64,000 bases of DNA from Phallusia mammillata (lineage: Eukaryota), in NCBI GenBank assembly GCA_965637545.1, contig OZ281499.1, forward strand, positions 10,168,001-10,232,000, given 5' to 3'. Below, piece after piece: positions 7,480 through 64,000 of this stretch. Below the pieces are notes generated by a model that made no database searches, was not told where the DNA came from, and saw only the letters and a list, made by a program, of their open reading frames with translations. Both the position numbers and the translations under genes were made by a program. Position 1 is the first letter of the stretch; each line of letters starts with the position of its first letter.

Positions 7480-10400
7480 ATGTACGAAAACGTCGCAAGC
7501 GTGCAAAGCAGAGGTTCCATAGGTAAGGGTTTGTTGACAAAAACAGACAGAAAGACTTAACTTTGTTTGTTAGATTTTGAAAGCGAATCCGGAAAGCAAA
7601 CTTCACACGAGTCAGGCATTTTTGCACAACTATTAATAACTTTACTGCTGACAGTTCTTGCGGTTGCCATCAGCGTTGGATTCGGAATCGAAATGGTATT
7701 TTAATTTGTTATCTGGCTATAAGGATTTTTTCATTTATTTTTTATGCTTGTTTTAGAAAATTTTCATTAAGGGGTTAGTGCCGTTAAAAAGATGATCACA
7801 AACTTTTTCAACCAATAATCAAGATTAATTAAGCTTATTAGTCAAAAACATAACCCCTTGAAACACGTATTTAGAGTAGGTGTAAAACTGTGTTCCAAAT
7901 CTTCACTGTTCCCCATTAGGTGGAAATACAGAGAGTGGAAGAGATGTCTATATCAAGTGTTGAAGGTATACAGTGTATATCGTAAAATAATTGTCTATAA
8001 GCAGCATATTTTACAAACATTCAGATTATTCCTATATTTTAAAGATTTTCACCAAATCGAGTCCGGCTCTTGCACTAGCCCAACATTTAAAGATTGCAAA
8101 GACGCCTTAAGTCAAGGTTACAAATTCTCAGGCCGTTTTACAATTAAACCCAATGCCAACACTTCGTCCTTTCAGGTGATCTTTCTTTGTTTGCTTGTAC
8201 GTTCATTTGGTGCTATATATATTTTTTGATTTCAGGTATATTGCGACATGTCTTCTGATAGTGGTGGTGGTTGGACGCTGGTAGCTTCAATTCACGAAGA
8301 CGATGTATGGAGCTTAGGTTCCGGAGATATGTGGACATCTGGTTGGTTTTGAAATGTTTTCAAGTAATTTAAACTAAACTATTGTGATAATGCAGCGTAC
8401 GACAACTGGTTTAATCTGCTAACGTTTGGCAAACTGGAAGATGTAACTAGTGCAGATTTTAAAAGCAAGGCCTTGTACGCTCTTAATGTAAGTACAACAA
8501 AAACATTTTCTTTGTATAACTATCTCTACCTTAACTACCTTAGTTGTGTTGTTTGTTGCAAACTGTCCAAACTGTCATCACATAAACGTTTGCTGCAATC
8601 AAACTCAAGGATATAAAATGCAATAATAACTTATTACAAGATAATAGTGTACAGAAACCATTGGTTTGTGGTGCATTAACTCATCAATACAGTTTTCGCA
8701 GGCCTCGGACATGATGGTATGGCATGTGCCTAATGATCTGGGACTATCATCAATTTCAAACGGTGCATTCTTCAAATATCACACAACAAACGGTTTTCTT
8801 CAAAAATATGGATCGAATCTACAAAGTTTGTTTACGCAATACTTTCCCTTAACCCGACTTAGCAGTGAATGTCCAGACAACTTTACCAGTCATCCCGAAA
8901 GTAAATGCGCTCTTAATTCAGACATATTTCAAAAAGTGTCAGATTGTGTGCAGGAAAATGACTGGGACAACCTTTGGCGCCGTCCATGGGACGAAAACGA
9001 TCCGAGTCCAGTTTATGAATTGGATAAGGTGCGTTAATTTTGTACATCTGGCAATGTTAGCGACCGAAAACAATCCTGATCTTGCGCAGATGACCCTTCA
9101 GTTAAATTCGCAAAAGACAATGAATATAAACGAGACAGGAAGTTACAGGTTGGTCATAAATCTACTTAATTTTCTCGTTTACTTTCGTATCACTGTCCTT
9201 TCATATTACTGACCAAGTAAATAAATTGTGTATTCATTGTACACCAAATTTCCGTCTATTTTCTTACTCTTATTCTTGTAGCGTTCCGGGTTTCAACTCA
9301 ATCTTTGCTGCATCACACACAACAAGCCACGTTGCCAGCAATGTAGTTTGGATTCCGTTGCAACGCAACGCTGTTGATGTCAATGTCAAGGTTCGTGAAT
9401 GATGGTTGAACAGTACCAAGCGAAATATGGTTTGTTTCAACTTATCAGGCTAAGCCACATCATTTTGAGTTGCGCTGATTTTTAGGAGGGTGGGGGAAGT
9501 AAAATAAGCGTGTTTGGTCTACAGTGGTTCTCAAACTTTTTTTAGTTGCGACGCCATTGGAAAAGTTTTTCTGGACTTGCGACGCACCAGCAAATAAAAG
9601 TTAATGATGAAACTTATTATTAAAGTTGTGTTTATTGATACAACACCAAATGCCACGAAACGAAACTATTCTGCGACGCCCTTGAAAAACTGAAACGACG
9701 CACCAGGGCGTCGCGACGCACAGTTCGAGAACTACTGGTCTAGGACAATAAATAAGTAATTACTATTATGGGTACAAATTATGATGCTCTATTTTCGAAA
9801 TCATAGTACGCCAGGCCTAATGAAGGCGTTATACCGAATCAGCCAATCACCAAGGATTCCCATATGGCAAGGCGTAGATTAGAAAAATCTGAATTTCTAC
9901 CTTACGCCTTGCCATAAAGGACTGCTTGGTGACCGGTGATTTGGTATAACGCTTTCATTTCGCTCCCTACAGTAGCAGTTTTTCCGTGTTTACTGTTGTC
10001 CAGGGGCGGCTCGTGCTAGGGTGCTGCGGAGCTGCAGCACCCCCTAGATATTTTTACTTAATACACCTACCATAATATTACAAATAGCTTTCATTATTTT
10101 TATTTTTTTTATTCCTTAGCAATATATAATAAGCATAATTTCCGACCTAATCACCTTTTTTTTTCATTAAATTTTTTTTTTTGGAAACACTAATGTATAT
10201 CTATGCTGGAACTGCAGCTCCAGTTTTCTGACGTTTCGTGACGTTTCATGACGTTTTGCGGTTCTGCGCATGCGCACTTTGAAAAGCTACATGCTGGGCG
10301 AAATAGGAGCCAGGGTGCTGCGGCTCGCGCAGCTCCACCAATCACGTAGCGTGTGACCTGGGCACCCGGAAGTAGTTGTCTGTTCCGCGTTTATTGTGTG

Positions 10401-13400
10401 CCAAAGCAAATCACGTGTACCATCAGGTTCGACAATGAGTACAGTACGACAGTTATTCTTTTTTAATCATTTTTACAGTTTTTGATTGAAAGGTTAATCA
10501 TGGCTTTTCAAGATTCTAATTCGGTGACTGTAAGTGAGCTTCAGCAACTTAAGATTTCGCAGTTATCAAGTGCTGAAAAGGTAAGTATAAAGAAAAAAGG
10601 GCGTCCAACGCCTGATATTCAACTTTGTCAGCCAGGAATGAGCCACAACAAGAAATGTATACGCAGATTTAATTCTGAATGGTATCAAAAGAAAAAATGG
10701 CTTTGTGGTTGTGAAGTTAAAAATGTACTGTTCTGTTTTCCATGTTTGCTGTTTGGAGGTGATGAAAAATGCTGGACAAAAAATGGTTTTACAAATGTAG
10801 CCAAAATAGGTGAGAAAGTAGAAAAACATGAAAAGTCAAAGAAGCATGTGGACAATGATGTTTCACTTTCACTTTTGGGAACTGTAAATATTAAGGAAAA
10901 ACTTAGTGAGGCGTATATAGACTTTCAATTATTGAACACAACAAAAAAGTGGAAAAAAATCGTGAAATTTTGTCCAAAATAATAGACTGCATTTTGTTCT
11001 GTGGAAACTTTGAAACTCCCTTACGTGGACATGATGAAAAAGGTGAGTATTGATATAATGGACATGTACTGTTTGTCTAAACAGTAGCTGCTAAATTGCT
11101 TCACAGGAAGTGTTTCTTAAGAATGAACATTCTACAGACAAGATAGTATAGTGACCACCAAGCACATCCTATTGTTGACAAAGAAAAGCTAAGTACTGAA
11201 ATGAAAATGTTTCTGTAGATCTGATGTTCATGATTACTTTGAAAATAATGTAGATGATGTTTTGACAAGTGAAATTACTAGGATGAAAAATCCTTTTTGC
11301 TGTTTCCATGAGTCCTTCAAAGGCAAAACAGTTTGGATGCAAACCTTTGTTAGGAACACCATTATTTCCAAAAGACTTGCACTTGCAGTGCTAGTACTAC
11401 TAAATAGAAAAACAGTTTCTCAGTTGTCATTTGGAATCAAGGAAGAAGCTATCAATTATCATGCCCAAACTATAACTTTATGATTCATTTTGGTTGTAAA
11501 AAGGAAGCACAAGGTTTAATAATATGGTTTAAATTTAAGTGAGAGTGTTGTAAATTTTAAAGCTTGAAGGAGTTTTGCACTTAAAAAAAGCAATCATAAG
11601 CTATTTGCCAGCAAATAAAGCAGCAATTATAGCAGTTAAAAATCTGAAAGACAAATAATAGTCTGTAAACAAAAATTCCAAAAAAAGATGTTAAAATAAA
11701 CAAGTTCTGACACAAATGTAAAGTGGTTGTTAAATTTGTCAGTTATGATACCAATAAACAGCTGTATGGCTAGTTTTTTGTGTGACAATTATAATCTGTG
11801 AAGTGTCATATAATATGTTGAAAACGCTGACTGTGACCATAAGGTTACTTAAATGAAACATGGCCATTTTTTTAAATGTTGTCGAACTGAAATACTTCGA
11901 CCTTTTTCGAATCATTACTTTTTTTTCTATATTCTTGTTGTGTTTTACCGTATTTACAACCGCTTAGTTTCGAGTCTGTGTCACGTGTGTTTTTGTTCCA
12001 CATTATTACTACATGTTATGGTGTTTATCCGTCGCTGTGCAAGTAAACAAAATACACAAATGATATCGTCTGGTCTGGTGTTTACACTCGTGTACATTAT
12101 TGCGTAACAAAAATTACGTCACAATGGAGTTTCTAATTAAGATTAGTATTACTTGTTTTTCTACACAAAACAATGGCTAGAAAACTATAAATGTAGGTTT
12201 TCTATATATTGCCAACTTATATATGTTCAATAAAGGCTAAAATTTTGAGCAGCACCCCCACAAATTTTAGGCACGAGCCGCCACTGCTGTTGTCTACATA
12301 CAATATAATCCAAAACCTAATGTATCAAACCCATAGTCAAACAGAATCAATCGTTTATAACAGTTTTCCCAGAATATTGGTAAAATATATATTCTGTTAA
12401 AATACTGTGTACAACGGCTGATTCTCTTCGGCCTAGGGTTTTATACATTGGGTTTTGGATTACGTTGGTCTGTATGGACGCTTCAGGACTGACCCCAGTT
12501 ATGAATTTATGTTCATCTTAGCTTCATTTTTGATTTTGATACAGGTTGCTTGGGGTCGCAAGTCCGCAATTTTAACTGATTCAGTACTTTCCAAAGGCTA
12601 TAACATAAGTTTTGGAGCAATGTGTGATTACAATTATTGCAACGTTCTCTTTACCATCACCAATTCCGTTGTAAGTTCTTAGTGTATTTGTATTTGTTAA
12701 TGGCAATATTTTTTTTGTTAAACTACTCCCATTCCTCTTGTTGCGTCTTATCTTTTTTATCCGGAGTGGGGACAATGCCTGAATGCATTGTGCTCACAAT
12801 GAGTCCGCCTTTTGAATACCTGTCTCATTGCAAGTCTTCTGGATCATTTTATACATTTATTTTATGATTTGTGCCAAGTTAAAGACTTGAATTTGCTACA
12901 ACCCGTCTCGTTTAATTGGTTTGGAGCAATTTTATTAAAGTTTTATGTGTGGGAAACATAAGTGGTTGAGGCGGTACTAGCTCCTTGGAAAGAAAGCTCA
13001 CGTAAAGAGCGTGCTAGTTTGATCCAGCTGTGACAAATCATACCAATAGAAAAACAAGTTTTTGCACACCATTTGTGTTTATCCAACAGAAATGGGGAAT
13101 GACATCTTCTTCCAATTCTCAATCATCAAAGTTTTACCAGAACAACGAACAAAGAGTTGTTGAAGTTCAAATCAGCAATATGACCAGGGCAACGCTGATT
13201 GGCTATGTAGTGTTTCAAAAGTAATTCTGTATGTTATATGTTAGTCAGTTATTTAAATTTCGATAACAAAATAAAACAACACTCAGAATATATACCAAGG
13301 ACCGACACGAATGGGATTGGATTCGTGTTCTAGAATATTTGCCGTGGTGCTTTGGTAAGAAGTGTGTTATTATCAAAACTATTGAAGTATAGCTTAAAAC

Positions 13401-14598
13401 CTTTTCGCTCAGATCATGTTCTAACGAAACGATACAAGATCCCTCCAAGTTTGTCTGTCCCGGTTAAGTTTATCAAAGGAAAAATGGATTACAACCAATC
13501 AGATGTTACTCCTGGATTCATTGAGTTCCGAAAGTATGGCAGATTTGAATATCCGTATTCGATATGTCCCGGAATAAGGTGACTTCAGTGACAGAAATGT
13601 TAGTGGGTGTGGGAAATGGTAATGCTTTTTACATTTAACTAGTCGTAAGTTCAAACCAAAATGTGATTTTGAAACCGAATGATGAATATGATTAGGTTGA
13701 AAAACGATACAGACCCTTCCTTGTATTGTATTGGCGGAATGACATACGCAACATGGTATTCATCTCATGACTTCTATGGTGATTTTTCTGGTTAGTCGTT
13801 TTGGTTTCTTCGCAGTGCAGTAAAATATCTAATTATAATGCACTATGCATGCACCAATTTGCATGATCAAAAACCTCCACGACACGAGCATTTCCGGGAC
13901 TCCAGCTCCACCTACCACGCTATACAGGCTCAGCGGTGAGCTTGTTGAAAGTCGAATCACAAGCACCGTTGCTTGCCTTATATGCTGCCCATGTCAGCTT
14001 GTTGGTAGTTGGGGATGGCCAGATTGACCAGTTATCAACCTGTGTCTGGGAAACTATGATTTATAAATTAGTGTGCAGTTCTCGCTGTTCTGCATGAACA
14101 CTTCAGCGCAGATCCCAGTTATGATTTTGAGGCTATATTTCAAATGCTTCATTGTGTTTTTAAATAGGCTGCCTCAGTATTCTTTTGGGAAAATCATCAA
14201 AAATGGTTTTGGCCAGCACCAAACCTTTTCATAGTCGCATTTGCTTCATATGCTGCAACATGCAATTTGCAAATCACTGTAAAAGCGTTTTACTGCCAAT
14301 AAATCTCTAAAACTCAATCTCAACTGAACTCAAATATTAAATGCTGTGTTTTGAAAGCTCGGAATCTACTTACAAATTTCGCTTCCAAATGCTTTACGCT
14401 GGTGCATATTTTAAAATTTTAAATTCAGATGTTTTAGGTAACTCAATATTTAGCACATTTTTTCAATTTAAAATTTTGGAATATCGTGTTTTCACAGCTT
14501 GGTACCAACTTGTAGCTCACAGAGTAAAGCGGGCCAACTCAACCACAGGAGGTGACGTCACCGATTTGACTTCCACTCTTCTACTGTTTTATCGCTAA
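7480..14598 (+). CDS. Copy A: membrane-anchored intelectin-like protein with a large insert, 15 exons, 573 aa, apparently intact
   Basis: Exons 7480-7522, 7574-7695, 7920-7965, 8045-8175, 8236-8341, 8396-8487, 8702-9028, 9090-9148, 9282-9390, 12545-12670, 13090-13220, 13287-13354, 13413-13578, 13696-13790, 14498-14598. All introns GT-AG; total 1722 nt, open frame. Motifs [52 protein letters not shown] and LLLFYR* match intelectin. Confidence 0.85.
9522..9737. mobile_element. hAT-like MITE in intron 9 of copy A
   Basis: TIRs cagtggttctcaaac / gttcgagaactactg. Internal gcgacgc repeats. TSD only partial. Confidence 0.65.
9819..9959. mobile_element. Fold-back MITE (family also at 23455-23935 and 27725-27841)
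   Basis: The two halves are reverse complements: aatgaaggcgttataccgaatc..caccaag..ccatatggcaaggcgtag versus ctacgccttgccata..cttggtgacc..ggtataacgctttcatt. Confidence 0.7.
10001..12286 (+). mobile_element. Internally deleted hAT DNA transposon with a ZnF-TTF / ZMYM1-like transposase fragment
   Basis: TIRs caggggcggctcgtgc / gcacgagccgccactg. Perfect 8-bp TSD ctgttgtc (9993-10000, 12287-12294). ORF 10482-10982 carries RRFNSEWY..WL....NVLFCFPCLLFG...W...GF....KHEKSKKH. Confidence 0.9.
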
Positions 14599-15438: not shown

Positions 15439-19341
<3,903 letters not shown>

Positions 19342-22800: not shown

Positions 22801-23454
22801 AACACATATATCATTTATCCACAAGTTAACACAAACTTAAGTAGATTTAATAACCAACCTGTAATTTCCCGTCTTGTTTATATTTATAGGTTTTAGCGCA
22901 TTTAACTGAAAGGTCATCTGTAAACGACAAGATTGTTAACGGTTGTAAACAGTGTCACTTTTTTCAAATTAACTTACCTTATCGAATCCATAAACTGGGG
23001 GCGGATAATTCTTGTCACCTGGACCTTGCCAAAGCCAGTCCCAGTTATATTCCTGCACACAGTCGGCCATTTTTCCAAATATGTATGAATTAAGAGGGCA
23101 TTCACTTTCAAGATAGGTAGAAAAGCTGTCCGGACATTTAGTGCTAATACGGGACAATGGAAAGTATTGCGTAAAGAAAGTTGGAAGATTCGATCCATAT
23201 TTCTGAAGAAATCCGTTTGTTGTGTGATATTTGAAAAATGCACCACTCGAAATTGTAGGTAATGCAAGATAATTTGGCACATGCCATATCATCAAGTCTG
23301 AAGCCTGGGAAAGGTGTATGGATTAGTTGTAATCGAATGCAAACCAAATCGATCTTATGCATAACTAAGATAAATACATTTATACCGGGATCAGCCCTGA
23401 ATCGTCGATGCAGACCTGAGATCATGCAATTCTCATCTTTAAATCATGGTACCC

Positions 23455-28847: not shown

Positions 28848-28898
28848 AAACAGATATAGAAGGGTCTATGCCTACTGCTGAAGGTACATGTTCTATGT

Positions 28899-37011: not shown

Positions 37012-41514
<4,503 letters not shown>

Positions 41515-49835: not shown

Positions 49836-52800
49836 TTAACGATAAAAAAGCAGAAGCGTTGACGTCAAATCAGTGACGTCACCCCCTGTCGTAGAATTGG
49901 CCCGCTTTTCTTTATGAGCTGCAAGTTGGTCCCAAGCTGTCAAATCATGATAATTCTTGTTATTTTAGATCAAACCGTTTTAGTAGTTAGCTCCGGAGAC
50001 TGATTTGTAAAAAAAAAACGAAGACTAGCCAATTAGCGAAACAAAAAAAAAACTCCTGTTAAATTTAATGTCTTATAATTAAAGTAAGTTATATCTGTAA
50101 TGTTGGGATGAGCATTTGTATTGATCTATTTGATTCACAATGTCGTTTATTTAAACTAGCCCAAGTGGCCAAATAAAACTGTCCAAAATATTTGATGTAA
50201 GTCAGAGGTTACAGCTAATCGGTACGTACCTGAAAAGTCACCACATCTCCGCCTGTAGGAATACAAGCTACCAGTTGTCAATCCGCCAATACAATGCAGG
50301 GAAGGGTCTGCATTGCCATCCAACCTTAAATAAATCAGAATTGAGAATTGACATCGTCTTAGTGTTTGATTGATAATTAACTTTTTCTTGTGTTTGAATG
50401 GAAATAGAATCAGTAAGTTTTTTATAGCTTTGTAACGCACCTGATTCCTGGACATATAGGATAAGGATACCCGGAACTGCCGTATTTTCGGAACTCAATG
50501 AAACCAGGTGTTATATCCGATGCGTAAAAGTCCATGTTTCCTTTGATAAAACTAGCAGGAACCGACAGACTGGGAAGGTTCTGATATTGAATTGTTTGGA
50601 AGTCATCTGTTGGTAAAAGAGTTGTAAAGCAGTGTTCTGTTATATTTTAACTCAGACATTACATAAATCCTTACCAAAGCAGCTCGGGATATTATCAAGA
50701 ATCTGAGTCCAGTCGTAACGGCCAGGGGTTGAGTCATATTTTCTAAAATAACAAAGTTTTTTTCTGCTAAATTGTTTTGTTTTTTCGGATTGAAACAAAT
50801 TTACCTTTGAAATACTGTATAACCGACTAAGGTGGCCTGTTTCAAGTGAGCTGTTCGTGCTTCAATATGTGTTTCGTTGTTTACTAGGTAAAAACTCGTC
50901 GTTTGGGAAAAGCTAGAAGTAACCTGACCTCCCCATTTCTTAAAAAAAAATAATAATTTGCTAGTTCACTCTCGTTAGCATTGTGACAGATTTTTGTACG
51001 TTTTATTTTTGGCATTTTATCTAATTTTTTAGCACACCATAGCTGAATTAAACAACCAAATTAGCCATTTTGTTAGCCTTATCCTACCGATGCACCTAAA
51101 AGAGTGTTTTGAACTCCTAATAAAGTTGACTTAGAAAAAAGATTCAATAGTTACTTACTTTGGAATTGGTAATGGTGAAAAGAACTTTACAGTGCGAGTC
51201 ACCACACTGTGCTCCATATCTTATGTAATATTCATTCTGTGATGTTGAGCTCCGCCTAAACCTCATATTTCTACCAAATGTTCCCCAATCAACCTTCAAA
51301 AAAAAAAACTTTGTAAAAAATGAAATCAAGCTACACATGCTTTGTGTTACAATTTTGATCCTCAGCAAAGGCTTTTATCAGATAATTAGGTACCTATACA
51401 GAACATAGTAAGCGATGTATAAATACGGTATGTTAAACCAAAGACCTGCATCAATGCCAAATGAAATAACTTGCCGAAGTATACATAGATGAATATTCCC
51501 TTGATAGTAAATTTTAGAGGCCAACTATAACTGTTACGTCTTTTTTCGGTTCTGCTTTAATAACGGGCTGTCAGTACCCAAAATAACACTTGTTTTTATA
51601 AAGATAAAAGAGTAAAACGATAAAAGCAGCGCAGATACACAATCGCGACAGAACCACAACTCCAACTCCAACTGCGGGCTTCTCAGTCGCGTGGGGCGTC
51701 CCCTCGACAATTCGTTACAGCGAACACGACATAGAAGTATGTTATAACGGCATATATAGGTGACAAAAATAAAAACGTAACATACCTTCACATTTACATT
51801 GCCTGCAGTATATGGTTTTGGAATCCAAACCATTGTGGTTGTAACTCTGGATGTTTTTCTCATTGCTACTTCAATCGGCTTAGCGCCTGTGACACTGCAA
51901 AATAACAACAACTTCATATTTAACAACGTTAGTTAAAAATGTGAATACCTTTCAGCGCATCCGGTCTAATTCGAAAGGGAAAAGTTTACCCGAGACAATG
52001 TAATAAACAAATTTTAACCAACCTGAAATTTCCCGTTCTGTTAATGCTTATTTCTGTTTGTGCATTGAATTTGATTGTCATCTGTACGAAATTAAGATTG
52101 CGTTATGTGATCGAATTACGATTTGTGCATGAAATAAAGAACCCACGTTGTCGCTTCGTGTGATTCGCACAGGATTTACTCGTTCAGATCGTTGAAACGA
52201 CCAGCGCCAAATATCACTCCATTCAGTTTTCTGCACACACCCTATCGCTTTCTCGGCCATACCTAAACAACAGATTTAATTATTGAACTGGGAGAAATCT
52301 ATTTTAAGAAAACCCTTTTCTTGACTTGTTGGGCTGTATCGTGTCATAGGAAAGTGTTGCGTAAACAAAGTTTGAAGATTCGATCCATATTTCTGAAGAA
52401 ATCCGTTTGTTGTATGATATTTGAAGAATGCGCCACTCGAAATTACTGGCAAACCAAGATCGTTTGGAACGTGCCAAATCATCATGTCTGAGGCCTGCAA
52501 AACCAGTTATTTAAAATGTTTACGTGCCAACCATTGCTCATGCAAATGTCACGACAGGCTTCAAAAAGGTTAAAAAAACTTTTAAAATGGTTTATTTGAA
52601 CTTACATTGAGAGCGTACAAAGCTTTGCTTTTGTAGTCCTCTCCGGTTACATCTTCCAAATCGCCAAACGATTTCATGTTAAACCAGTTGTCATATGCTG
52701 TAAAATGCTACAAAACGTAAACCAAAAATTGAAAAAAAACGTATAATTTACAAACTGACCGGAAGCCGACGATTCCTTTGACCACTTGTCTTGGGAATCG

Positions 52801-53512
52801 CAGCTACTACTGATGTCATCTTCGTGAACTGAAGCCACCAACGTCCAACCACCACCACCGGACGACATGTCGCAAAATACCTAATACTTATGTTTAGCTC
52901 GACTGAGGCGAAATAACAATCAAATTTTTGTACCTGAAACTCGGAAGTGTAGTCATTGGGTTTAATAGTGAGAAGACCTGTGATGTTGTAGCCTTGACTT
53001 AAAGCGTCTTTGCAGTCCTTAAATATTGGCTTGCTGCAAAATCCGGATTTCACTGGCTGTTGAACTACAAAATGTATAGGTCATTAAAGTCACGGTTAAT
53101 GAAAATGTCACTTCAGACCCTTGCTTTACCTCGCATACTCGTCATCGCCTTTGATTTTGGTCTTGGTGTTTCCATCTAATATTAAACAAATATACTTTGA
53201 AAGTCGATCTAATATTTACACCTTTGAAAAAATATTAGTTTTTGTATTGATAATTGTTTATCTTAGCACAACTTACCGTTTTATTCAAACAAAAACTAAA
53301 ATTACCATTTGAATTCCGAATCCAACACTTATGGCAATCACAAGAACTGTCAGCAGCAAAATGATCAGAAGAAGTGAAAAAATGCCCGACTCGCGCGAAC
53401 TGCCCCTTCCAGAGCTGCGTGCTGAAATTAACAGTAATCGTGAAAAAGTATCAGATTATATGACCGCAACAATGATACCTGTACGATGTTCGCCTCTTCC
53501 GTTTTCAAACAT
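49836..53512 (-). CDS. Copy G: intelectin-like gene with insert, 16 exons, apparently intact
   Basis: Starts MFENGRGEHRTARSSGRGSSRESGIFSLLLIILLLTVLVIAISVGFGIQM. Close paralog of F; all exons in phase; ends LLFYR*. Confidence 0.8.
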
Positions 53513-55412: not shown

Positions 55413-58400
55413 ATGTATGGCAACGGCACAGGTAAACAGTGTACATGTACATTTGTTGAGGAATGCTATTACAATAAAATCAATTTTTTTATCAATTCCT
55501 GTCATTTTATTTTAGCACGTAACTCAGGGGGAAAGAGTAGTTCACGAGAGTCAGGCATCTTTGCACAACTTCTGATCATTCTACTGCTGACAGTTCTTGT
55601 GGTTGCCATCAGCGTTGGATTCGGTATTCAAATAGTATGTATAAAACGTGACAATTATATTACGCTTGACTCAGTAAAATTAGTTATTGTGTAATGCTAG
55701 ATGGAAACACCAGGAGCAGCACCAAAACAAACGGCCAATGTTGGGGGTAAATTCATTTTGTGATATCGTTTTGTTATTGGTTTTAACTGTGTGACCATTT
55801 TTTCAGATCCAGTTGATCAGTCATTGAAATCCGGTACTTGTAGCCAACCAGCATTTAAAGATTGCAAACACGCTCTACACCAGGGCTACAACACCTCAGG
55901 CCTTCTCTCCATTAAACCCAATGACTACACATCCGAATTTCAGGTAACGTTTTTGAAACAACAGATAAACTGTCCTAGACAAAAATCGCCTAAAACCACG
56001 TGCCTTCTTGCAAACAATTGCAGTTGCGTATAATTAACTGAAGCTTTCAGTATACTTGTATCAGTCTGCGTTTTGTTTATGAAATGGTAAGTTATGAAAC
56101 ACAAAATTCAATTTTGCCACTATAATTGCACCCTCAGTGCCTACAAATAAGTTCTCATGAACATAAATTTTTATGTTTTATTGCATTGCATAACTAACAA
56201 CGCAGACTTATTCAAGTATACTAAAAGCCTTAGTTGATTCGAATTTTGGTAGCCGACTATTTGTTACCAGGTATATTGCGACATGTCGTCTGATGGCGGT
56301 GGTTGGACGTTGGCGGCTTCAATTCACGAAGATTCTATAACTGGAAACTGCGATTTCGGGGACATGTGGTCAAAGACCTCTTCGTCGGCTTCTGGTTGGT
56401 TTTCGAACGTATTTCTGTCAAAAATATAGTGTTTGTTACATATAACTTATTACAGCATTTGACAACTGGTTCAATCTGAAATCATTTGGCAAACTTGAAG
56501 ATGTAACTGGACAAGACTATAAAAGCAAAGCTATGTACGCTCTCAATGTAAGTTTGTTGTAATTATGTAGTCACAATGCAGTTTTTTGGACAAAACAAAT
56601 ATCTTTGTCGAGTCCATACTAATGACCAAAATATTTCGTCAATAACGTAATGGGTTGTAGTAATAACATTTTGTCGGTTCACAGGCTTCAGACTTGATGA
56701 TATGGCACGTTCCAAACGATCTTGCTTTGCCAGCAATTTCGAGTGGCGCATTCTTTAAATATCACACAACAAACGGTTTTCTTCAGAAATATGGATCGAA
56801 TCTTCAAACTTTGTTTACGCAGTACTTTCTTATGACACGACAGAGTCCGCAAGGTCGGAGTATCCTTTCATTGCTTTTAGTATTTAAGCCATGTAATACT
56901 TTATTTATTTAGATGTGGCCGGAAAAGTGATAGGATGTGTGCAAAAAAATAATTGGGGAGGACTATGGCGTTATTCGTGGGATCGTATTAACCCGATCGG
57001 CCTAGCTCGAGTAAAACAACATGACAAAGTGCGTTGCTTTTTTTAGTGATCAATCTTTAGTTTGCAGTATAACACAATCTTAAGTTGTTACAGATGACAA
57101 TTCAATTCAACACACAAAAGACGATCAGTATTACCAATGCAGGATTCTACAAGTGAGTTAAACTTCCTTCCTCATGTCTCTCGCATAATAATAATTTTTG
57201 TTTTCATGGATATAAGACTTATATATTATAAGCAGGGTTGCCATACCGTCCTTATTTCTAAGATTTGTCCTTATTTTTAAGGGCAATGTCTTAGAAAAAT
57301 GTATTGTCCTTATTTCAAAGAAATGTCCTTCCTTTTGACTTACGTCCTTATTTTGTCTTATTTTCAACAATTACAAGTCCAATCCCTGCCACAAGTAAAA
57401 GTATACCTAGACCTGAGCAGTCGTGAGATGCACAAAGTATTTTCTACAAACAAGGAGTTGCTGGAACAGATTGTTCCTGGGCAAAAAATATGACATGCGA
57501 TATGAACGCGAAAAATTATTTAAAAACTTTTGTTTCGTTTCGAATGGACACTTATTTTTTCCGTTGTCCTTATTTTCGACTCCGTGTCGATGGCAACCCT
57601 GATTATAAGTAATAAAGATTACGAACTCAATCACAATACGCGATGGCGCCTTTAATGGGTACTGTGGTACTGTGGTTTTATATGAGTGTGCCGTGATCGC
57701 TGGTCTGCATAGACGCTTCAGGGCTGATCACAGTTACGAATTTATGTTAATTGTAACAGATAACGAACTATTAATGATAAAGTATTGTTGTAGTGTTTCG
57801 GGCAGTAAGCCGATCGAAGTGGCCATGCGAAAAACCTCAACAGCTGCAACTACCTTGGTATGGATTCCATTGCCATACGTGAAGATCGATGTTGATGTGA
57901 AGGTACGTTTGTCATTAATATTCAGGTAAATGACCACATATTTAAGTTGAACTGAAGCAAGGACGTGTCATTAGCTTTTTATATTCTGTAATCCGTGACT
58001 TGTTTGTAGCCGCATTGCGTGGTTAGCTGGTTTGAATTTCGGAGCGTAATTGTTTTTTGCAGGTTGATTGGGGAACATTTGGCAAAAACCCAAGGTTTAG
58101 GTGGAGTTCAACAACATACCGCGATTACAGCATCAGATTTGGAGCCCAGTGTGGTGGCTCATATTGCAAAGTTCTTTTCACTGTCACCAATTCCCAAGTG
58201 AGCATAACTTTTTTTTAATCTGTGTTTTGTGGCAATCATTCCTCTTTCTCTATTATCAGTTGTGGTTGCTTATCTAACCTTTATTTGCTTCTATTTAACT
58301 TGTTTTTGTTATTAAGGACTGGGGACAAATATCCTCCACCAATTCCCAAGCAACCAACTTTTACCGATCAAAAAACCGAACAGAAGTCCGAGCTGAAATA

Positions 58401-59663
58401 CGAAATATGAATCGGGCCACTTTAGTTGGATATACTGTATTTCAACGGTAAATTCGATTAATTTGATTGAAATTATGCACTATGACTTTAACGGTCTGTC
58501 AAAAAACTTTGTTCACATAGAAAATATAGAAATGTTCGAAGTAGCTCTACCTGGAAAACTGTTCTGGACAATATGCCGAGCTGCTTTGGTAGGTGTTTAT
58601 TGTAGCTAGATTACAAACAAGAACATAGTAATTACCCTTTTCTCTCAGATGATACTGAATTAACGCAATATGGAGACCTTCCAAGTTTGTCTGTTCCTGC
58701 TACCTTTATCAAAGGAAGCATGGATTACTACGATTCGGATATTGTTCCTGGTTTCATTCAATTCAGGAAATACGGCAGTTCCGGAAATCCTTATCCAATA
58801 TGTCCAGGAATTAAGTGCGTATTAAACATTAGAAAATTACCGTGGCCTAATTCTAATAGTAACTTTGCATTAAAGACAACCAAGTATTTTAGATGTTGTC
58901 GACACACGAATCATGTTTACTTTTCTGTAGATTAGAAACCAATGCTGATCCATCCCTGCATTGTATTGGTGGAATAGAAAGTGGTTCAGCGTATTCCTCC
59001 AAACGGAGATGTGGTGATTTTTCTGGTAAGTGTCGGTTGGTCCCAAGCTGTATACCGAGTACATAAAAATAGTGTTGTACTGAGATGTGTATCACTGGCT
59101 AGTTTATCTGCCATGGCCAAGGTTCAGGCGCGCGCACACACATGCTGAAAAATGTCATCTCCACGTGATAGCGAAAAAAATATACGTAACCTGGCGGAAC
59201 TTTTCCCGATTTTGTGCTGTCCGAAGCAAATATTGGCAAATAGTTGCCCCTATTCTTATGGTGTAAGCCGGCCTTCGGTATCGAACGTTGGTATCGAAAA
59301 CTGAGGTAAAATATTTCTATACCGAGTACGACTAGGCTCTCGATTCTTGATATATTGCAACCGAGACTGTGCAAAAAGCAAATCTTGTAGCCATCATTGT
59401 TTTGTATCATTCGTTAATCAGCAGTTATTACTGTGCAAAAGCTGGTTAACTTCTAGGCGGATTGTATCGGATTACTTGATAAGTAGCGACTTATTTTTTA
59501 GGTATTAGTTAGGATATTAACCAATCAGTATGCATCTAGATTAAATAATTCTTTATAACCAGATTGGGACCAACTTGCAGCTCACAAAATAAAGAGGGCC
59601 AACTCTACGACAGGGGATGACGTCACTGATTTGACGTCAACGATTCTGCTTTTTTATCGTTAA
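55413..59663 (+). CDS. Copy H: intelectin-like gene with insert, 16 exons, apparently intact
   Basis: Starts MYGNGTARNSGGKSSSRESGIFAQLLIILLLTVLVVAISVGFGIQI. Extra intron at 56854-56912. Ends DWDQLAAHKIKRANSTTGDDVTDLTSTILLFYR*. Confidence 0.85.
57233..57601. mobile_element. hAT-type MITE in copy H, absent from copy I
   Basis: TIRs cagggttgccat / atggcaaccctg. 8-bp TSD attataag. Internal gtccttattt repeats. Uninterrupted site near 63250-63270 in I. Confidence 0.85.
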
Positions 59664-61390: not shown

Positions 61391-64000
61391 ATGTATGGCA
61401 ACGGCACAGGTAAACAGTGTACATGTACATTTGTTGAGGAATGCTATTACAATAAAATCAATTTTTTATCAATACCTGTCTTTTTATTTCAGCACGTAGT
61501 TCTGGAAAGAGTAGTTCAAGAGAGTCAGGCATCTTTGCACAACTTCTGATCATTCTACTGCTGACAGTTCTTGTGGTTGCCATCAGCGTTGGATTCGGCA
61601 TTCAAATAGTATGCATAAAATGTGGCAATTATATAGCACTTGACTCAGTAAAATTAGTTATTGTGTAATACTAGATGGAAACACCAGGAGCAGCACCAAA
61701 ACAAACGGCCAAAGTTGGGGGTAAATTCATTTTGTGATATCGTTTTGTTATTGGTTTTTACTGTGTGACCATTTTTTAGATCCAGTTGATCAGTCATTGA
61801 AATCCGGTACTTGTAGCCAACCAACATTTAAAGATTGCAAACACGCTCTACACCAAGGCTACAACACCTCAGGACTTCTCTCCATTAAACCTAACGACTA
61901 CACATCCGAATTTCAGGTAACGTTTTTGTAACAACAGATTACTGTCTTTGACAAAAATCGCCTAAAACCACGTGCGTTCTTGCAAACTACTGTAGTTGCG
62001 AAAAATCATATTCAACTGAAGCTTTCAGTATACTTGACACAAGAATATGTGTGTTTTGTTTTAATATGGATTAAAACACAAAATTCGATTTTGAACTATA
62101 ATGGCACCATCAGTGCCTACAAATAAGTTCTTTTTAATATAGATTTTTATGTTTCATTACTTTGCATAACTAAAAACGCAGACTTATTCAAACATACTGA
62201 AAGTCTCAGTTGAATATCATTTAAACAACATTCGCATTTACCCAATGACTACACCTCCAGTTTTAAGGTGAATCAAAAAAATCCAAACAACATTTGCAGT
62301 TATATATTCAACTATTTGATTTCAGGTATACTGCGACATGTCGTCTGATGGCGGTGGATGGACGTTGGTGGCTTCAATTCACGAAGATTCGATAACTGGA
62401 AACTGCGATTTCGGGGACATGTGGTCAAAGACCTCTTCGTCGGCTTCTGGTTGGTTTCCGAAATGTATTCATGTATTTCTGTCAAAAAATGAAGTATTTG
62501 TTACAAATATTACAGCATTTGACAACTGGTTCAATCTGAAATCATTTGGCAAACTTGAAGATGTAACAGGACAAGACTATAAAAGCAAAGCTATGTACGC
62601 TCTCAATGTAAGTTTGTTGTAATTAAGTCACAGTTTTTTGGATCAAACAATTATGTTTGTCGATTCTAATCTTATTACCAAAATATTTCGTCAATAACGT
62701 AATGGGTTGTAGTAATAACATTGTGTCGGTTCACAGGCTTCAGACTTGATGATATGGCACGTTCCAAACGATCTTGCTTTGCCAGCAATTTCGAGTGGCG
62801 CATTCTTTAAATATCACACAACAAACGGTTTTCTTCAGAAATATGGATCGAATCTTCAAACTTTGTTTACGCAGTACTTTCTTATGACACGACAGAGTCC
62901 GCAAGGTCGGAGTATCCTTTCATTGCTTTTAGTATTTATGGCCATGTAATACTTTATTTATTTAGATGTGGCCGGAAAAGTGATAGGATGTGTGCAAAAT
63001 AATAATTGGGGAGGACTTTGGCGTTATTCGTGGGATCGTAGTAACCCGATCGCCCCAGCACGAGTTAAACAACATGACAAAGTGGGTTGCTTTTTTAATG
63101 ATCAATCTTTAGTTTGCAGTATAACACAATCTTAAGTTGTTACAGATGACAATTCAATTCAATACACAAAAGACGATCAGTATTACCAATGCAGGATACT
63201 ACAAGTGAGTTAAACTTCCTTCCTCATGTCTCTCGCATAATTTTGTTTTCATGGATATAAGTAACAAAGATTACGAACTCAATCACAATACGCGATGGCG
63301 CCTTTAATGGGTCTGGCGTACTGTGGTTTTATATGAGTGTGCCGTGATCGCTGGTCTGCATAGACCAGTGGTTCTTAACCTTTTTGCTGTGGTTTCCCAC
63401 TAAAGTCAATTAACAACTTCGAATTTCTCCCTTGGTTATTTTTATAATCATGTTTTGTGCCCTACGTTAACAAAAAATTTTATTTTATGAAATAATTTTG
63501 TGGAGCGATTTGGTCTGAATCCTAAAGGTATACTGCAATCTTTTTTAGTTTGAAAAGTGCTTCTGCGAGAGATTAAACTTTTTGGAATACTGAAAAGTCT
63601 GCTCTGCTTGCATTAGTCATTTATTGCATCACAATCAACAAACGAAAGGCTTTTGTTTGCGCACAATAGCAAAGTCATTGATGGTTTTACTCATCTCTGT
63701 GATGTAACAAACAGCCTTTGAATTTGAATGTGTCTTGTAAACCTTGATAAAATCAATCTTAGTAACTTTCAACGGTTAATTTAAAGCCGGATTTGAACCT
63801 TGTGCCCGAGTCTGCTCTTTGCAAGCTTACATAATTTCCCACCGAAAACATTGAATTTCCCACTAGTGGGAAATTTCCCACCGGTTAAGAACCACTGGCA
63901 TAGACGCTTCAGGGCTGATCACAGTTATGAATTTATGTTCATCTTATTAGATTACGAACTAATAATAATAAAGCATTCTTATAGTGTTTCGGGCAGCAAG
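61391..64000 (+). CDS. Copy I: intelectin-like gene, 5-prime part only (runs off the window end)
   Basis: Starts MYGNGTARSSGKSSSRESGIFAQLL. Exons are in phase up to the start of the SVSGSK exon (~63984). Near-identical to H. Confidence 0.8.
63366..63897. mobile_element. hAT-type MITE in copy I, absent from copy H
   Basis: TIRs cagtggttcttaacc / ggttaagaaccactg. Perfect TSD gcatagac. Empty site ggtctgcatagacgcttcagg at ~57701-57722. Confidence 0.9.

What the first reader, a model, noticed from the sequence alone, without database searches (positions are those of the whole stretch)
7480..64000. Array of at least nine membrane-anchored, split intelectins: a candidate diversified pattern-recognition receptor family
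Seen in the sequence: nine paralogs share one exon plan, namely short N-tail, ~25-aa hydrophobic segment, short stalk, intelectin N-half, ~230-aa insert, intelectin C-half ending LLFYR*. Six splice to intact frames, two are pseudogenes and one is truncated by the window. Established: vertebrate intelectins are ~310-aa secreted lectins that bind microbial glycans, and FIBCD1 is the known type II membrane fibrinogen-domain receptor. Inference: these ~570-aa proteins are cell-surface receptors evolving by birth-and-death, as immune or allorecognition gene clusters do. I do not know of a described intelectin with this architecture, but I cannot run a search to confirm novelty.
Basis: partly seen in the sequence, partly recalled or inferred. 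Interest (0 to 1): 0.9.

Follow-up and report, generated by a model that had tools for sequence, protein, structure and literature searches.

The report
Split intelectin gene array with bacterial-type insert
This stretch of the sea squirt Phallusia mammillata holds nine copies of a lectin gene whose sugar-binding domain is interrupted by an extra 230-residue module related to bacterial and phage surface proteins, a tunicate-wide family that nobody seems to have described.

Summary
I rebuilt nine paralogs of 14-15 coding exons. Six splice to intact 541-576 aa frames. One needs a substitute splice acceptor, one is a clear pseudogene, and one is cut by the window end. Each encodes a short tail, one hydrophobic segment, the intelectin N-half, a 223-246 aa insert and the intelectin C-half ending LLFYR.

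RNA contigs from three runs cross all eleven predicted introns of copy 4, so both halves and the insert lie on one mRNA. That mRNA, however, starts with the ascidian spliced leader at exon 2 and lacks the anchor exon. Anchoring in the other copies rests on purifying selection and on homologs, not on RNA.

The architecture is not unique. Ciona, Clavelina, Styela and Phallusia all have such "uncharacterized" proteins, and I found no paper describing them.

New here: the insert belongs to a domain family, absent from Pfam, that occurs in phage proteins and giant bacterial surface proteins. Its predicted fold resembles the galactose-mutarotase-like supersandwich. The window's copies are the most divergent members and lack the residues that hold the ligand calcium in human intelectin-1. 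An immune function is unproven.

First-stage notes of this scan also record split intelectins on other pieces of this genome.

The parts
7480..14598 (+). Copy c1: 14 coding exons, 552 aa, intact frame. Intron 7 is long (9391-12544). Two Cys conserved in the other copies are replaced (WSLGSG and YGDF).
   Evidence: Gene model and splice sites; alignment.
15439..19341 (-). Copy c2: 14 coding exons, 561 aa, intact frame, one GC donor. Closest paralog of c4 (77% protein identity; introns are also alignable).
   Evidence: The listed RNA runs held 0.00 of its sampled words.
20845..26554 (-). Copy c3: pseudogene. The anchor exon is split by about 0.8 kb (26400 to 25597), exon 10 has a frameshift, exons 6 and 7 are truncated, and the invariant GGGW has become GGGR.
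27469..34667 (+). Copy c4: 576 aa if read from its relic anchor exon (27469-27645). The mRNA seen starts at 30500 (exon 2) and encodes the 472 aa protein P0001.
   Evidence: model; RNA contigs cross all 11 introns from exon 2 to exon 11; P0001 is 471/472 identical.
30498..30499 (+). AG acceptor for spliced-leader trans-splicing of the c4 mRNA, 8 nt upstream of the predicted cis-acceptor of exon 2 (exon 2 starts at 30508).
   Evidence: In run X17 the loose end TACGGGATTCTATTTGAAT lies before 30497. The Ciona spliced leader is ATTCTATTTGAATAAG (PMC1488885).
31263..33935 (+). Part of c4 that encodes the 246 aa insert: the 3' half of exon 5, exons 5b, 6, 7, 8 and 8b, and the start of exon 9, with their introns.
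37012..41514 (+). Copy c5: 15 coding exons, 544 aa, intact. Subgroup B, with an extra 63 nt intron in exon 5.
42846..46910 (-). Copy c6: 536 aa, reached only through an alternative exon-2 acceptor. The canonical CAG is CGG at about 46350, and the first fibrinogen-domain Cys is lost.
49836..53512 (-). Copy c7: 15 coding exons, 545 aa, intact. 88% identical to c6.
55413..59663 (+). Copy c8: 15 coding exons, 541 aa, intact.
61391..64000 (+). Copy c9: exons 0 to 5b (272 aa) lie in the window and the start of exon 6 is near 63935. The rest is outside the window. P0092 is probably its product.
53306..53421 (-). Example of the anchor exon (c7 exon 1), encoding ...[30 protein letters not shown]. Homologous exons: c1 7574-7695, c2 19122-19237, c5 37107-37222, c6 46702-46817, c8 55516-55634, c9 61493-61608.
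   Evidence: hydropathy; dN/dS 0.13-0.30.

Best explanation
The window is from Phallusia mammillata. It holds a cluster of nine paralogs of a tunicate-wide family that I call split intelectins.

**Protein plan.** The typical product is a single-pass type II membrane protein. It has a cytoplasmic tail of about 22-27 aa (35 in c4), one signal-anchor segment, a very short stalk, and an ectodomain with the intelectin (fibrinogen-related) fold. A second domain of about 230-250 aa is nested in the loop that follows the '...YPL/YPV' strand of that fold.

**The nested domain.** It belongs to a family otherwise found in phage proteins and in giant secreted bacterial surface proteins. Its predicted fold is a beta-supersandwich like the N-terminal domains of GH65, GH94 and GH15 enzymes and like galactose mutarotase.

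**Inferred mechanism.** The ectodomain is displayed on the cell surface and binds extracellular ligands, most likely glycans.
- In the window's subfamily the calcium and diol site of human intelectin-1 is not kept, and the insert's N-terminal DGGxDMFDxGN motif is lost.
- Whatever these copies bind is therefore not bound in the classical intelectin way.
- The tail carries no recognisable signalling motif, so signalling would need a partner. Otherwise the proteins act as adhesion or capture molecules.

**History of the cluster.** It evolves by duplication (including inverted pairs), divergence to 58-88% identity, and decay. c3 is dead, c6 has lost a splice site, and c4 has lost use of its anchor exon and is expressed as a trans-spliced, anchor-less mRNA.

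**Shown:** gene structures; one mRNA spanning both halves and the insert; homology of the insert to the prokaryotic domain; purifying selection.
**Inferred:** membrane topology in vivo; ligand type; any immune role; that the nested domain came from prokaryotes by horizontal transfer.
For: - **Gene models:** intact frames with canonical splice sites.
- **RNA:** contigs of about 1.6 kb in three runs from at least two studies cross all 11 introns of c4 exactly as modelled.
- **Species and transcript match:** P0001 (Phallusia mammillata) is 471/472 identical to c4.
- **Intelectin identity:** PDB intelectins match at E 1e-28 to 5e-34 in two stretches. Foldseek on the model gives E 5e-12 to 5e-11 to 7e1e, 5zc0, 4wmo, 4wmq and 6usc.
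- **Family:** 30 or more insert-bearing proteins in Ciona intestinalis, C. savignyi, Clavelina, Styela and Phallusia, most with an N-tail and TM segment.
- **Anchor:** one hydrophobic segment per protein; dN/dS 0.13-0.30 among c1, c2 and c5-c8.
- **Insert homology, sequence:**
  - Phage protein P0178 against the Clavelina protein P0048: BLASTP E 1e-15 over 285 aa, with shared motifs.
  - A tunicate-only profile scores 25-61 bits on phage and bacterial loci.
  - A prokaryote-only profile scores up to 107 bits (E 1e-33) on tunicate inserts and does not hit ordinary intelectins.
  - The window's inserts hit the tunicate insert profile at 20-31 bits in five of seven copies (9 and 4 bits in c4 and c2), and hhalign gives 93.5% probability.
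- **Insert homology, structure:** the best AlphaFold DB matches of the phage model are the insert regions of Ciona savignyi H2Z0U1 and H2YWG1 (E 5e-13 and 4e-11).
- **Fold:** VIA-align Z 8.2-7.2, almost only to supersandwich domains of carbohydrate-active enzymes; ESM Atlas TM-score 0.45-0.57.
- **Prokaryotic context:** phage replication-module contigs and 18 IMG/VR loci; bacterial proteins carrying Por_Secre_tail, HYR, Ig-like, fn3, S8, dockerin and Laminin_G_3 domains.
Against: - The only copy with RNA evidence (c4) skips the anchor exon. Its mRNA begins with the spliced leader at exon 2. The first in-frame AUG gives a protein without a signal or anchor, and an out-of-frame AUG lies upstream (sequence).
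- The second database transcript from the cluster (P0092) also lacks the N-terminal part.
- c2 was not found in the RNA runs listed.
- No RNA shows an exon 1 to exon 2 joint for any copy.
- The prokaryote-only profile does not detect the window's own inserts. Only their C-terminal 100 residues or so are recognisably homologous to the canonical insert.
- The structure models are of modest confidence (pLDDT 61 and 72). Fold matches at Z about 8 are borderline by the tool's own note.
- Ligand-site residues are lost, so lectin activity itself is uncertain.
Confidence: 0.6

Rival explanations
1. The array is a decaying, largely non-functional lineage-specific expansion. The copies are relics of the functional split intelectins found elsewhere in the genome, and the transcripts seen are aberrant.
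For: - c3 is a pseudogene.
- c6 has lost a splice acceptor.
- The c4 mRNA lacks the anchor and has no good start codon.
- c1 has lost two conserved Cys.
- Ligand-site residues and the insert's hallmark motif are lost.
- c2 is silent in the listed RNA runs.
- The insert of P0001 sits on a very long branch.
Against: - Six copies keep 14-15 exons open with canonical splice sites, although dS between subgroups is 0.7 to above 1.
- Whole-gene dN/dS is 0.13-0.40, and 0.09-0.35 in the intelectin halves.
- The available RNA libraries are of unknown, probably non-immune, tissues.
Confidence: 0.2
2. The proteins are secreted. The hydrophobic segment acts as a long, cleaved signal peptide, or the ectodomain is shed, so they work as soluble lectins like ordinary intelectins.
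For: - Ordinary intelectins are secreted.
- Some family members (P0035, P0018, P0033) have a signal-like N-terminus followed by collagen-like repeats instead of a tail and TM segment.
- The stalk in the window's copies is only a few residues long.
Against: - The hydrophobic run is about 25-30 residues and follows a tail of 22 or more residues. To my knowledge that is typical of signal anchors rather than cleaved signals.
- Homologs in Styela and Ciona have 30-90 aa tails before the TM segment.
Confidence: 0.12
3. The nested domain is an old animal domain that was lost everywhere except in tunicates, or was passed from eukaryotes to bacteria and phages, rather than gained by tunicates from prokaryotes.
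For: - The tree is unrooted. Tunicate and prokaryotic sequences sit on opposite sides of one branch, and tunicates are not nested inside any prokaryotic clade.
- The domain is encoded by about 7 exons with ordinary introns.
- The Atlas feature search hinted at cnidarian clusters, but only at lead level, 0.89.
Against: - Searches found the domain only in tunicates among eukaryotes.
- In contrast there are 62 loci in several bacterial phyla plus 18 phage loci.
- All tunicate copies sit at the same point of the intelectin fold, which fits one insertion event.
Confidence: 0.3
4. The N-half and the C-half are separate genes that gene prediction has joined wrongly.
For: None found. The 1.2 kb intron in c4 and the 3.2 kb intron in c1 inside the insert-coding part could have suggested it.
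Against: Single RNA contigs in three runs span exons 2 to 11 through every predicted junction. RefSeq and UniProt homologs in five species have the same layout.
Confidence: 0.01

Closest known systems
Vertebrate intelectins (human ITLN1/omentin, Xenopus XEEL and XCGL-1, lamprey serum lectin; PDB 4WMQ/4WMY, 4WMO, 7E1E)
   Same: - Same fold and sequence family on both sides of the insert: [14 protein letters not shown], PGFxQFR, CIGG, CGDF, and the C-terminus LLFYR.
- E 1e-28 to 5e-34; Foldseek E 5e-12 to 5e-11.
   Different: - Split by a nested domain of 223-246 aa.
- Predicted signal anchor instead of a cleaved signal peptide.
- The positions of E244, E262, H263 and E274 of human ITLN1 are not kept in the window's copies: DPSL[F/H/Y]C replaces NxEHxC.
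- The equivalent of W288 is kept.
FIBCD1 (vertebrate type II membrane protein with a fibrinogen-related ectodomain; from my own knowledge)
   Same: Predicted type II topology with a C-terminal fibrinogen-related recognition domain on the outside.
   Different: FIBCD1 has a coiled-coil and polycationic stalk and a classical, uninterrupted fibrinogen-related domain, not an intelectin domain. It has no nested domain. This was not compared by sequence here.
Uncharacterized tunicate proteins: Ciona intestinalis LOC100185179 and F6QVV8, C. savignyi H2YWI5, H2Z0U1 and H2YWG1, Clavelina LOC143468938, Styela clava LOC120342979 and LOC120328249, and others
   Same: The same family. The insert sits at the same point of the intelectin fold, and most have an N-tail and TM segment.
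   Different: - These keep the insert's hallmark motifs (IPxFYxYxYD, DGGxDMFDxGN, GADGxG, DPSICEVYF, GYTLLSR), and some keep the equivalent of E262.
- The window's copies have lost the N-terminal motifs and are 14-30% identical to them in the insert.
- Some Styela members carry two inserts in tandem.
Unannotated prokaryotic domain with the DGGxDM[FY]D motif: phage proteins of 282-336 aa (P0176-P0178, L004-L018), the C-terminus of a 629 aa phage protein (L019-L021), and repeats in giant bacterial surface proteins (L022-L083)
   Same: Homologous to the tunicate insert over nearly its whole length. The predicted structures match.
   Different: In prokaryotes it stands alone or is repeated in tandem, and is never nested in an intelectin. 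No Pfam or PHROG family covers it. Its function is unknown.
Galactose-mutarotase-like beta-supersandwich domains (N-terminal domains of GH65, GH94, GH15 and GH63 enzymes; aldose 1-epimerases)
   Same: Best structural resemblance of the insert domain model: Z 8.2-6, 140-180 residues aligned at 3.5-4 Å; Atlas TM-score 0.45-0.57; weak Foldseek hits.
   Different: No sequence similarity (4-9% identity) and borderline scores. This is a resemblance of fold only, and no catalytic or binding residues can be carried over.

Membership tests
Intelectin (X-type lectin) family | Significant sequence similarity to intelectins over the fibrinogen-related N-part and the intelectin-specific C-part | tested here: met
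   P0001 (c4) against PDB intelectins gives E 1e-28 to 5e-34 in two stretches. The exon 5 N-part gives E 4e-7. All full-length copies end LLFYR.
Intelectin (X-type lectin) family | Intelectin fold | tested here: met
   The AlphaFold model of P0001 matches 7e1e, 5zc0, 4wmo, 4wmq and 6usc in Foldseek at E 5e-12 to 5e-11, with TM-score by target 0.60-0.64. Model confidence is moderate (pLDDT 61).
Intelectin (X-type lectin) family | One uninterrupted domain of about 280 aa | tested here: not met
   An insert of 223-246 aa lies between the two matched stretches.
Intelectin (X-type lectin) family | Ligand-site residues of human ITLN1. E274, W288 and Y297 are cited in PMC12800186 and N260 in PMC9434060. 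N243, E244, E262 and H263 are from my own knowledge of Wesener et al. 2015. | tested here: not met
   Alignment of the C-halves: the window's copies have G-S-[VSF]-[EG] in place of N-N-E-x, DPSL[F/H/Y]C in place of CNxEHxC, and no acidic residue at the place of E274. The W equivalent is kept.
Intelectin (X-type lectin) family | Secreted, with a cleavable signal peptide | tested here: not met
   There is a tail of 22-35 aa followed by about 25-30 hydrophobic residues. This rests on hydropathy only, because no signal-peptide predictor was available.
Intelectin (X-type lectin) family | Calcium-dependent binding of glycans | not testable with these tools
   Needs recombinant protein and glycan arrays.
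Fibrinogen-related domain (Pfam Fibrinogen_C, PF00147) | Match to the Pfam model above its gathering score | tested here: inconclusive
   Single exons of c2 score 15.6 and 17.3 bits against a cut-off of 22, covering only the first 48 model positions. P0001 has no hit. The homologs P0035 and P0060 score 36-37 bits over positions 3-48. As far as one search shows, this partial match is also usual for ordinary intelectins.
Tunicate split-intelectin family (defined here) | Insert of about 230-250 aa at the same point of the intelectin fold (after ...YPL, before PVxFxKG) | tested here: met
   Alignments A1 and A2; motif distances.
Tunicate split-intelectin family (defined here) | The insert is homologous to the inserts of the other members | tested here: met
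   Window inserts alone against a profile of canonical tunicate inserts: 20-31 bits for c1 and c5-c8, weaker for c4 and c2. hhalign gives 93.5% probability, E 2e-7, over 113 columns. Only the C-terminal half is recognisable.
Tunicate split-intelectin family (defined here) | N-terminal cytoplasmic tail plus a single TM segment (type II) | tested here: inconclusive
   The sequence predicts it, and the anchor exon is under purifying selection in six copies. The c4 mRNA omits the anchor exon, and there is no RNA evidence for the other copies.
Prokaryotic DGGxDM[FY]D domain family (unannotated) | Significant match to a profile built from prokaryotic members only | tested here: not met
   c1-c9 score -1 to 6 bits, whereas canonical tunicate inserts score 33-107 bits. 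Membership of the window's copies is therefore only transitive, through the tunicate family.
Prokaryotic DGGxDM[FY]D domain family (unannotated) | Hallmark motif DGGxDM[FY]DxGN | tested here: not met
   The motif is absent from the window's copies: P0001 aligns WPGRRSF...FDP at that place.
Galactose-mutarotase-like supersandwich fold | Structural match clearly above background | tested here: inconclusive
   Z 8.2 at best, with hits almost all of this fold, and Atlas TM-score up to 0.57 by the hit. However, Foldseek gives E above 0.008, and the tool notes that Z near 8 is common.

The most novel reading that the evidence does not exclude
An ancestor of ascidians captured an extracellular supersandwich domain from a bacterium or phage and inserted it into a surface loop of an intelectin. 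This created a chordate membrane-receptor family with two nested binding modules, which then expanded and diversified, as in this nine-gene array. It would be a domain-level horizontal transfer into an innate-immune lectin. Whole-gene screens for transferred genes in tunicates would miss it: the 2026 Ciona survey lists eight other gene groups (PMC13390645).
Probability: 0.4. Interest if true: 0.85.

Novelty: new variant of a known kind. Interest (0 to 1): 0.68.

Why it matters
**Intelectins.** They are studied as soluble, single-domain lectins that recognise microbial glycans. Here the same fold is predicted to be membrane-anchored and tolerates a whole second domain nested in a loop. That makes it a natural case of domain insertion in a lectin and a possible route to new specificities.

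**A new link between tunicates and prokaryotes.** The nested domain connects tunicate proteins to a large, unannotated family of phage and bacterial surface modules.
- It gives that family its first eukaryotic members.
- It offers a testable candidate for domain-level horizontal transfer in the lineage that also acquired cellulose synthase from bacteria.

**The array itself.** It shows duplication and decay side by side, including one copy that has switched to an anchor-less, trans-spliced transcript.

**Practical value.** About 30 "uncharacterized" tunicate proteins can now be annotated, and the prokaryotic domain deserves a family entry.

Tried and rejected
- **Pfam on single exons and whole homologs:** only the first 48 positions of Fibrinogen_C match, and nothing covers the insert.
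- **PHROGs:** nothing for the insert or the phage proteins.
- **ESM Atlas searches:** only lead-level hits.
- **Whole-library search with exon 5 of c2:** found the insert part only in P0001, because the window's subfamily is so divergent.
- **Scan of viral contigs with the mixed alignment A3:** Repeated with P0178 alone.
- **IgGFc-binding N-terminal domain.** One AlphaFold DB hit (F6T172) carries this name. No member of the alignment hits that Pfam family, and I could not fetch the sequence, so this stays an untested lead.
- **Foldseek of the phage model against the PDB:** no significant hit.
- **Separate genes for the two halves:** rejected by RNA.
- **ORFs in the long intron of c1 (10467-10979, 11205-11480):** I thought they might be a hAT-type transposase, but Pfam gives nothing.
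- **Wesener et al. 2015 (PMC4526365):** not held in the library, so four ligand-site residues rest on my own knowledge.
- **Reads caps:** Expression and 5' ends of c1 and c5-c9 could not be examined.

Full report
**1. What is in the window**

The window has 36% G+C and is clearly eukaryotic. Eight open stretches end in ...LLFYR followed by a stop, four on each strand. Clustering all open stretches of 30 or more codons gives families of 8-9 members for every exon class. At the DNA level the copies are alike only in exons (68-92% identity). The exception is c2 and c4, which also share intron sequence.

**2. Gene models**

A protein found in the whole-library search, P0001 (472 aa, Phallusia mammillata, "Uncharacterized protein LOC100183495"), let me place the splice junctions of copy 4. 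With two upstream exons, c4 reads as 576 aa through 13 exons with GT-AG borders. P0001 is 471/472 identical to residues 105-576 of this model, so the window is Phallusia mammillata.

I carried exon phases over to the other copies and refined two regions.
- An alignment of the 5' regions shows a conserved ATG in a short exon 0 (19-43 nt). A 51-84 nt intron follows it, and then the anchor exon.
- Copies c5-c9 have an additional 59-63 nt intron inside exon 5. At that place c1-c4 carry about 20 extra codons.

The final models are as follows.

| Copy | Strand | Span | Product | State |
|---|---|---|---|---|
| c1 | + | 7480-14598 | 552 aa | intact |
| c2 | - | 15439-19341 | 561 aa | intact |
| c3 | - | 20845-26554 | none | pseudogene |
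| c4 | + | 27469-34667 | 576 aa | intact frame (see section 4) |
| c5 | + | 37012-41514 | 544 aa | intact |
| c6 | - | 42846-46910 | 536 aa | substitute acceptor only |
| c7 | - | 49836-53512 | 545 aa | intact |
| c8 | + | 55413-59663 | 541 aa | intact |
| c9 | + | 61391-64000 | 272 aa in window | cut by window end |

- c6 has CGG where c7 has the CAG acceptor of exon 2. It stays in frame only through an acceptor 27 nt downstream, which removes the first Cys of the fibrinogen-related part.
- c3 is a pseudogene. About 0.8 kb interrupts its anchor exon, exon 10 is frameshifted, exons 6 and 7 are truncated, and the invariant GGGW reads GGGR.
- c9 runs off the window after exon 5b. P0092 starts with 22 residues identical to 63935-64000 and is 93% identical to c8, so it is probably c9's product.

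Protein identity between copies is 58-88%.

**3. Protein architecture**

Every model has a single strongly hydrophobic segment. Its Kyte-Doolittle mean over 19 residues is 2.55-3.17, and 1.92 in c4. It follows a tail of 22-35 residues, and no other segment exceeds 1.6.

The part after the segment matches solved intelectins in two blocks. Residues 4-128 of P0001 align to 67-186 of human intelectin-1 (and to the matching parts of XEEL and the lamprey lectin). Residues 377-450 align to the C-terminal third. E-values are 1e-28 to 5e-34. Between the blocks lie 223-246 residues with no Pfam match. In ordinary intelectins WHVPN and PGFxQFR are 83 residues apart. Here they are 307-328 apart.

**4. RNA evidence**

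RNA runs of the same organism hold 0.22-0.31 of the sampled words of the c4 stretch. Exons make up 37% of that stretch. The RNA runs listed for the c2 stretch held none of its words.

I laid four runs on 30400-34720. Single contigs of 1602-1615 nt in three runs, at least 99% identical to the window, cross all eleven introns from exon 2 to exon 11 at exactly the modelled GT..AG borders.

The same call shows how the mRNA begins. The contigs start at 30497-30502. In run X17 the contig continues upstream with TACGGGATTCTATTTGAAT. Together with the next three genomic letters (AAG) this is the ascidian spliced leader ATTCTATTTGAATAAG (PMC1488885). The leader is preceded by TACGGG, which I read from my own knowledge as the end of a template-switch oligonucleotide, meaning a true 5' end.

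The leader is joined at the AG at 30498-30499, 8 nt upstream of the exon-2 cis-acceptor. The c4 mRNA therefore lacks exons 0 and 1.
- Its first in-frame AUG is the M of ...CDMSSNSGGGW, which is exactly where P0001 starts.
- An out-of-frame AUG lies upstream in exon 2 (sequence).

As expressed, c4 is not membrane-anchored and may not yield a normal protein. Three other features fit this: c4's anchor exon lies 2.9 kb from exon 2 (0.2-0.5 kb in the other copies), carries an Asp in the hydrophobic run, and shows relaxed constraint.

**5. Selection**

Nei-Gojobori estimates on the codon alignment:

| Region | dN/dS |
|---|---|
| Anchor exon, among c1, c2, c5-c8 | 0.13-0.30 (0.42 for c5 against c8) |
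| Anchor exon, pairs with c4 | 0.57-0.89 |
| Intelectin N-half | 0.06-0.35 |
| Intelectin C-half | 0.09-0.26 |
| Insert | 0.19-0.53 |
| Whole gene | 0.13-0.40 |

dS ranges from 0.10 (c8 against c9) to above 1 between subgroups. The copies are old and constrained. The insert evolves fastest, but nothing reaches 1 over a whole region. This supports function, including function of the anchor exon outside c4. It does not show diversifying selection.

**6. The family outside this window**

Searches with P0001, with the insert of a Styela protein, and with a profile of the C-terminal two thirds found insert-bearing proteins in these species:
- Ciona intestinalis (LOC100185179, F6QVV8)
- C. savignyi (H2YWI5, H2Z0U1, H2YWG1)
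- Clavelina lepadiformis
- Styela clava (at least eight genes)
- Phallusia mammillata (four further transcripts)
- unnamed transcriptome or metagenome records

All are named "uncharacterized", "cortical granule lectin-like" or "fibrinogen C-terminal domain-containing".

In the alignment the insert always sits at the same place. Most members have an N-terminal tail and TM segment, often followed by a Thr-rich stalk. Some have a signal-like start with collagen-like repeats. Three Styela proteins carry a double insert.

An amphioxus intelectin (P0006) has a TM segment and collagen region but no insert. So anchoring is not confined to tunicates, while the insert, as far as these searches reach, is.

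First-stage notes of this scan mention further split intelectins on other pieces of this genome. I did not check them.

Four literature searches found no paper that describes the architecture. A 2026 survey of horizontally transferred genes in Ciona lists eight other gene groups.

**7. What the insert is**

The profile search also returned three metagenomic proteins of 268-294 aa (P0176-P0178).
- P0178 aligns with the insert of the Clavelina protein P0048 over 285 residues at BLASTP E 1e-15.
- The shared motifs are FYxYxxDG, ILDGGNDMFDxGN, GADGxG, SDPSICxVY and LLSRTS.
- It is encoded on contigs with RecA-like, 5'-3' exonuclease, DnaB, ribonucleotide reductase and family A polymerase genes, which is a phage replication module.
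- Eighteen IMG/VR viral loci carry relatives, including a 629 aa protein with the domain at its C-terminus after a weak Ig-like match.

A scan of one genome per prokaryotic species found 62 loci in Bacteroidota, Verrucomicrobiota, Planctomycetota, Actinomycetota and others. There the domain lies, often two or three times, inside proteins of 450 to more than 2800 aa. These carry type IX secretion tails, HYR, Ig-like, fn3, subtilase, dockerin or Laminin_G_3 domains, which marks them as secreted surface proteins.

I checked the homology without circularity.
- A profile built from tunicate inserts alone scores 25-61 bits on the phage and bacterial proteins.
- A profile built from prokaryotic domains alone scores 33-107 bits (E down to 1e-33) on canonical tunicate inserts.
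- That prokaryotic profile does not hit ordinary intelectins.

No Pfam or PHROG family covers the domain.

The window's own inserts are the most divergent.
- The prokaryotic profile does not detect them.
- They hit a profile of the other tunicate inserts at 20-31 bits (c1, c5-c8) and 4-9 bits (c2, c4), over the C-terminal 100 residues or so.
- Profile-to-profile comparison gives 93.5% probability.
- The DGGxDMFDxGN region is unrecognisable in them.
- P0001 sits on a branch of more than 5 changes per site.

**8. Fold**

AlphaFold2 of P0001 with the family alignment gave pLDDT 61. The intelectin parts scored 70-90. The insert appears as a disordered first part, a beta-sandwich (residues 181-326, pLDDT 60-70) and two helices.

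The phage protein, modelled with 34 sequences, gave pLDDT 72 and pTM 0.74. It has an N-terminal helix, a sandwich of about ten strands and a C-terminal helix.
- Its best AlphaFold DB matches are the insert regions of Ciona savignyi H2Z0U1 (residues 232-463, E 5e-13, TM-score 0.64) and H2YWG1.
- Against solved structures, Foldseek finds nothing significant.
- VIA-align returns almost only galactose-mutarotase-like supersandwich domains: the N-domains of GH65 kojibiose phosphorylase, GH94 phosphorylases, GH15, GH63 and aldose epimerases. Z is 8.2-6, with 140-180 residues aligned at 3.5-4 Å.
- The ESM Atlas search agrees, with GH65 N-domains at TM-score 0.45-0.57. So do the secondary hits of the P0001 model.

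The scores are borderline, so I call this a resemblance and not membership.

**9. The old ligand site**

I aligned the C-halves of the window's copies, 14 family members and 9 ordinary intelectins.
- Ordinary intelectins, including the tunicate ones, keep F-N-x-E and C-N-x-E-H-x-C.
- The window's copies have Y-G-S-[V/S/F]-[E/G] and D-P-S-L-[F/H/Y]-C. They have no acidic residue where human ITLN1 has E274.
- The Trp that corresponds to W288 is kept.
- Some other split intelectins keep the equivalent of E262 but not of H263.

E274, W288 and Y297 as binding-site residues are cited in PMC12800186, and N260 and position 297 in PMC9434060. The roles of N243, E244, E262 and H263 are from my own knowledge.

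The classical calcium and diol site is therefore not preserved here.

**10. Origin of the insert**

In a maximum-likelihood tree of 16 tunicate and 25 prokaryotic domains, all tunicate sequences lie on one side of a branch with 97/90 support. This fits a single insertion. The tree is unrooted and tunicates are not nested in any prokaryotic group, so neither donor nor direction is shown.

Transfer from prokaryotes is suggested only by distribution: many bacterial phyla and phages on one side, and among eukaryotes tunicates alone on the other.

**11. Verdict**

The reading "membrane-anchored split intelectins" fits the family and six of the copies by sequence. It is contradicted for c4 by RNA and is untested for the rest. 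"Pattern-recognition receptor" is a reasonable guess without direct support.

The architecture is already present in public protein sets but appears undescribed. The link of the insert to a phage and bacterial surface domain is, as far as I could search, new.

Noticed in passing
window 33027-33125 (inside intron 6 of c4): A short segment has high RNA depth (75-135 in X16, 8-13 in X22). Spliced-leader loose ends (TTCTATTTGAATAAGGAACTGATGATGCC) lie before 33027/33041, and loose ends behind 33061-33125 match nothing in the laid stretch. It looks like the trans-spliced first exon of another gene, or of a paralogous locus elsewhere, lying within c4's intron.
   Followed up: no
window 2204-3205 (-): Intronless ORF of 334 aa upstream of the array. 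It has NxS/T sites near the N-terminus and several long hydrophobic segments, like a multi-pass (perhaps seven-helix) membrane protein. No Pfam match.
   Followed up: partly
window 10467-11480 (+), in the 3.2 kb intron of c1: Two open stretches of 171 and 92 codons, Cys/His-rich and Lys-rich. They look like the remnant of a mobile element, but there is no Pfam match.
   Followed up: partly
c1: window about 8300-8340 and 13760-13790: c1 has Leu where the other copies have Cys in W-S-C-G-x-G-D-M-W, and Tyr where they have Cys in C-G-D-F. Two conserved Cys are lost together in an otherwise intact copy.
   Followed up: partly
P0139, P0022, P0140 (Styela clava, 812-877 aa): These family members have 484-535 residues between WHVPN and PGFxQFR, which means two insert domains in tandem inside the intelectin fold.
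   Followed up: partly
L036, L040, L046, L049, L074, L078, L083 (bacterial loci): Single bacterial surface proteins hold two or three copies of the domain, spaced about 300-430 residues apart.
   Followed up: no
L022 (Candidatus Nanopelagicaceae chromosome OZ254138.1): The bacterial sequence closest to the phage proteins (44% identity; it groups with them at 100/99 support) lies at the N-terminus of a protein of more than 1600 aa that has a Laminin_G_3 domain. This may point to the phages' hosts.
   Followed up: no
P0006 (Branchiostoma floridae, 507 aa): An amphioxus intelectin with an N-terminal hydrophobic segment, a coiled-coil-like stretch and collagen repeats but no insert. Membrane-anchored or collectin-like intelectins exist outside tunicates.
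   Followed up: no
AlphaFold DB entry F6T172 (234 aa): Named "IgGFc-binding protein N-terminal domain-containing protein". It matches residues 90-294 of the phage domain model at E 6e-8. A possible distant link to that domain family, which I could not test.
   Followed up: no
PMC13390645: The 2026 list of candidate transferred genes in Ciona includes UDP-galactopyranose mutase, the enzyme that makes the precursor of galactofuranose, a classical intelectin ligand. I saw only the section heading.
   Followed up: no
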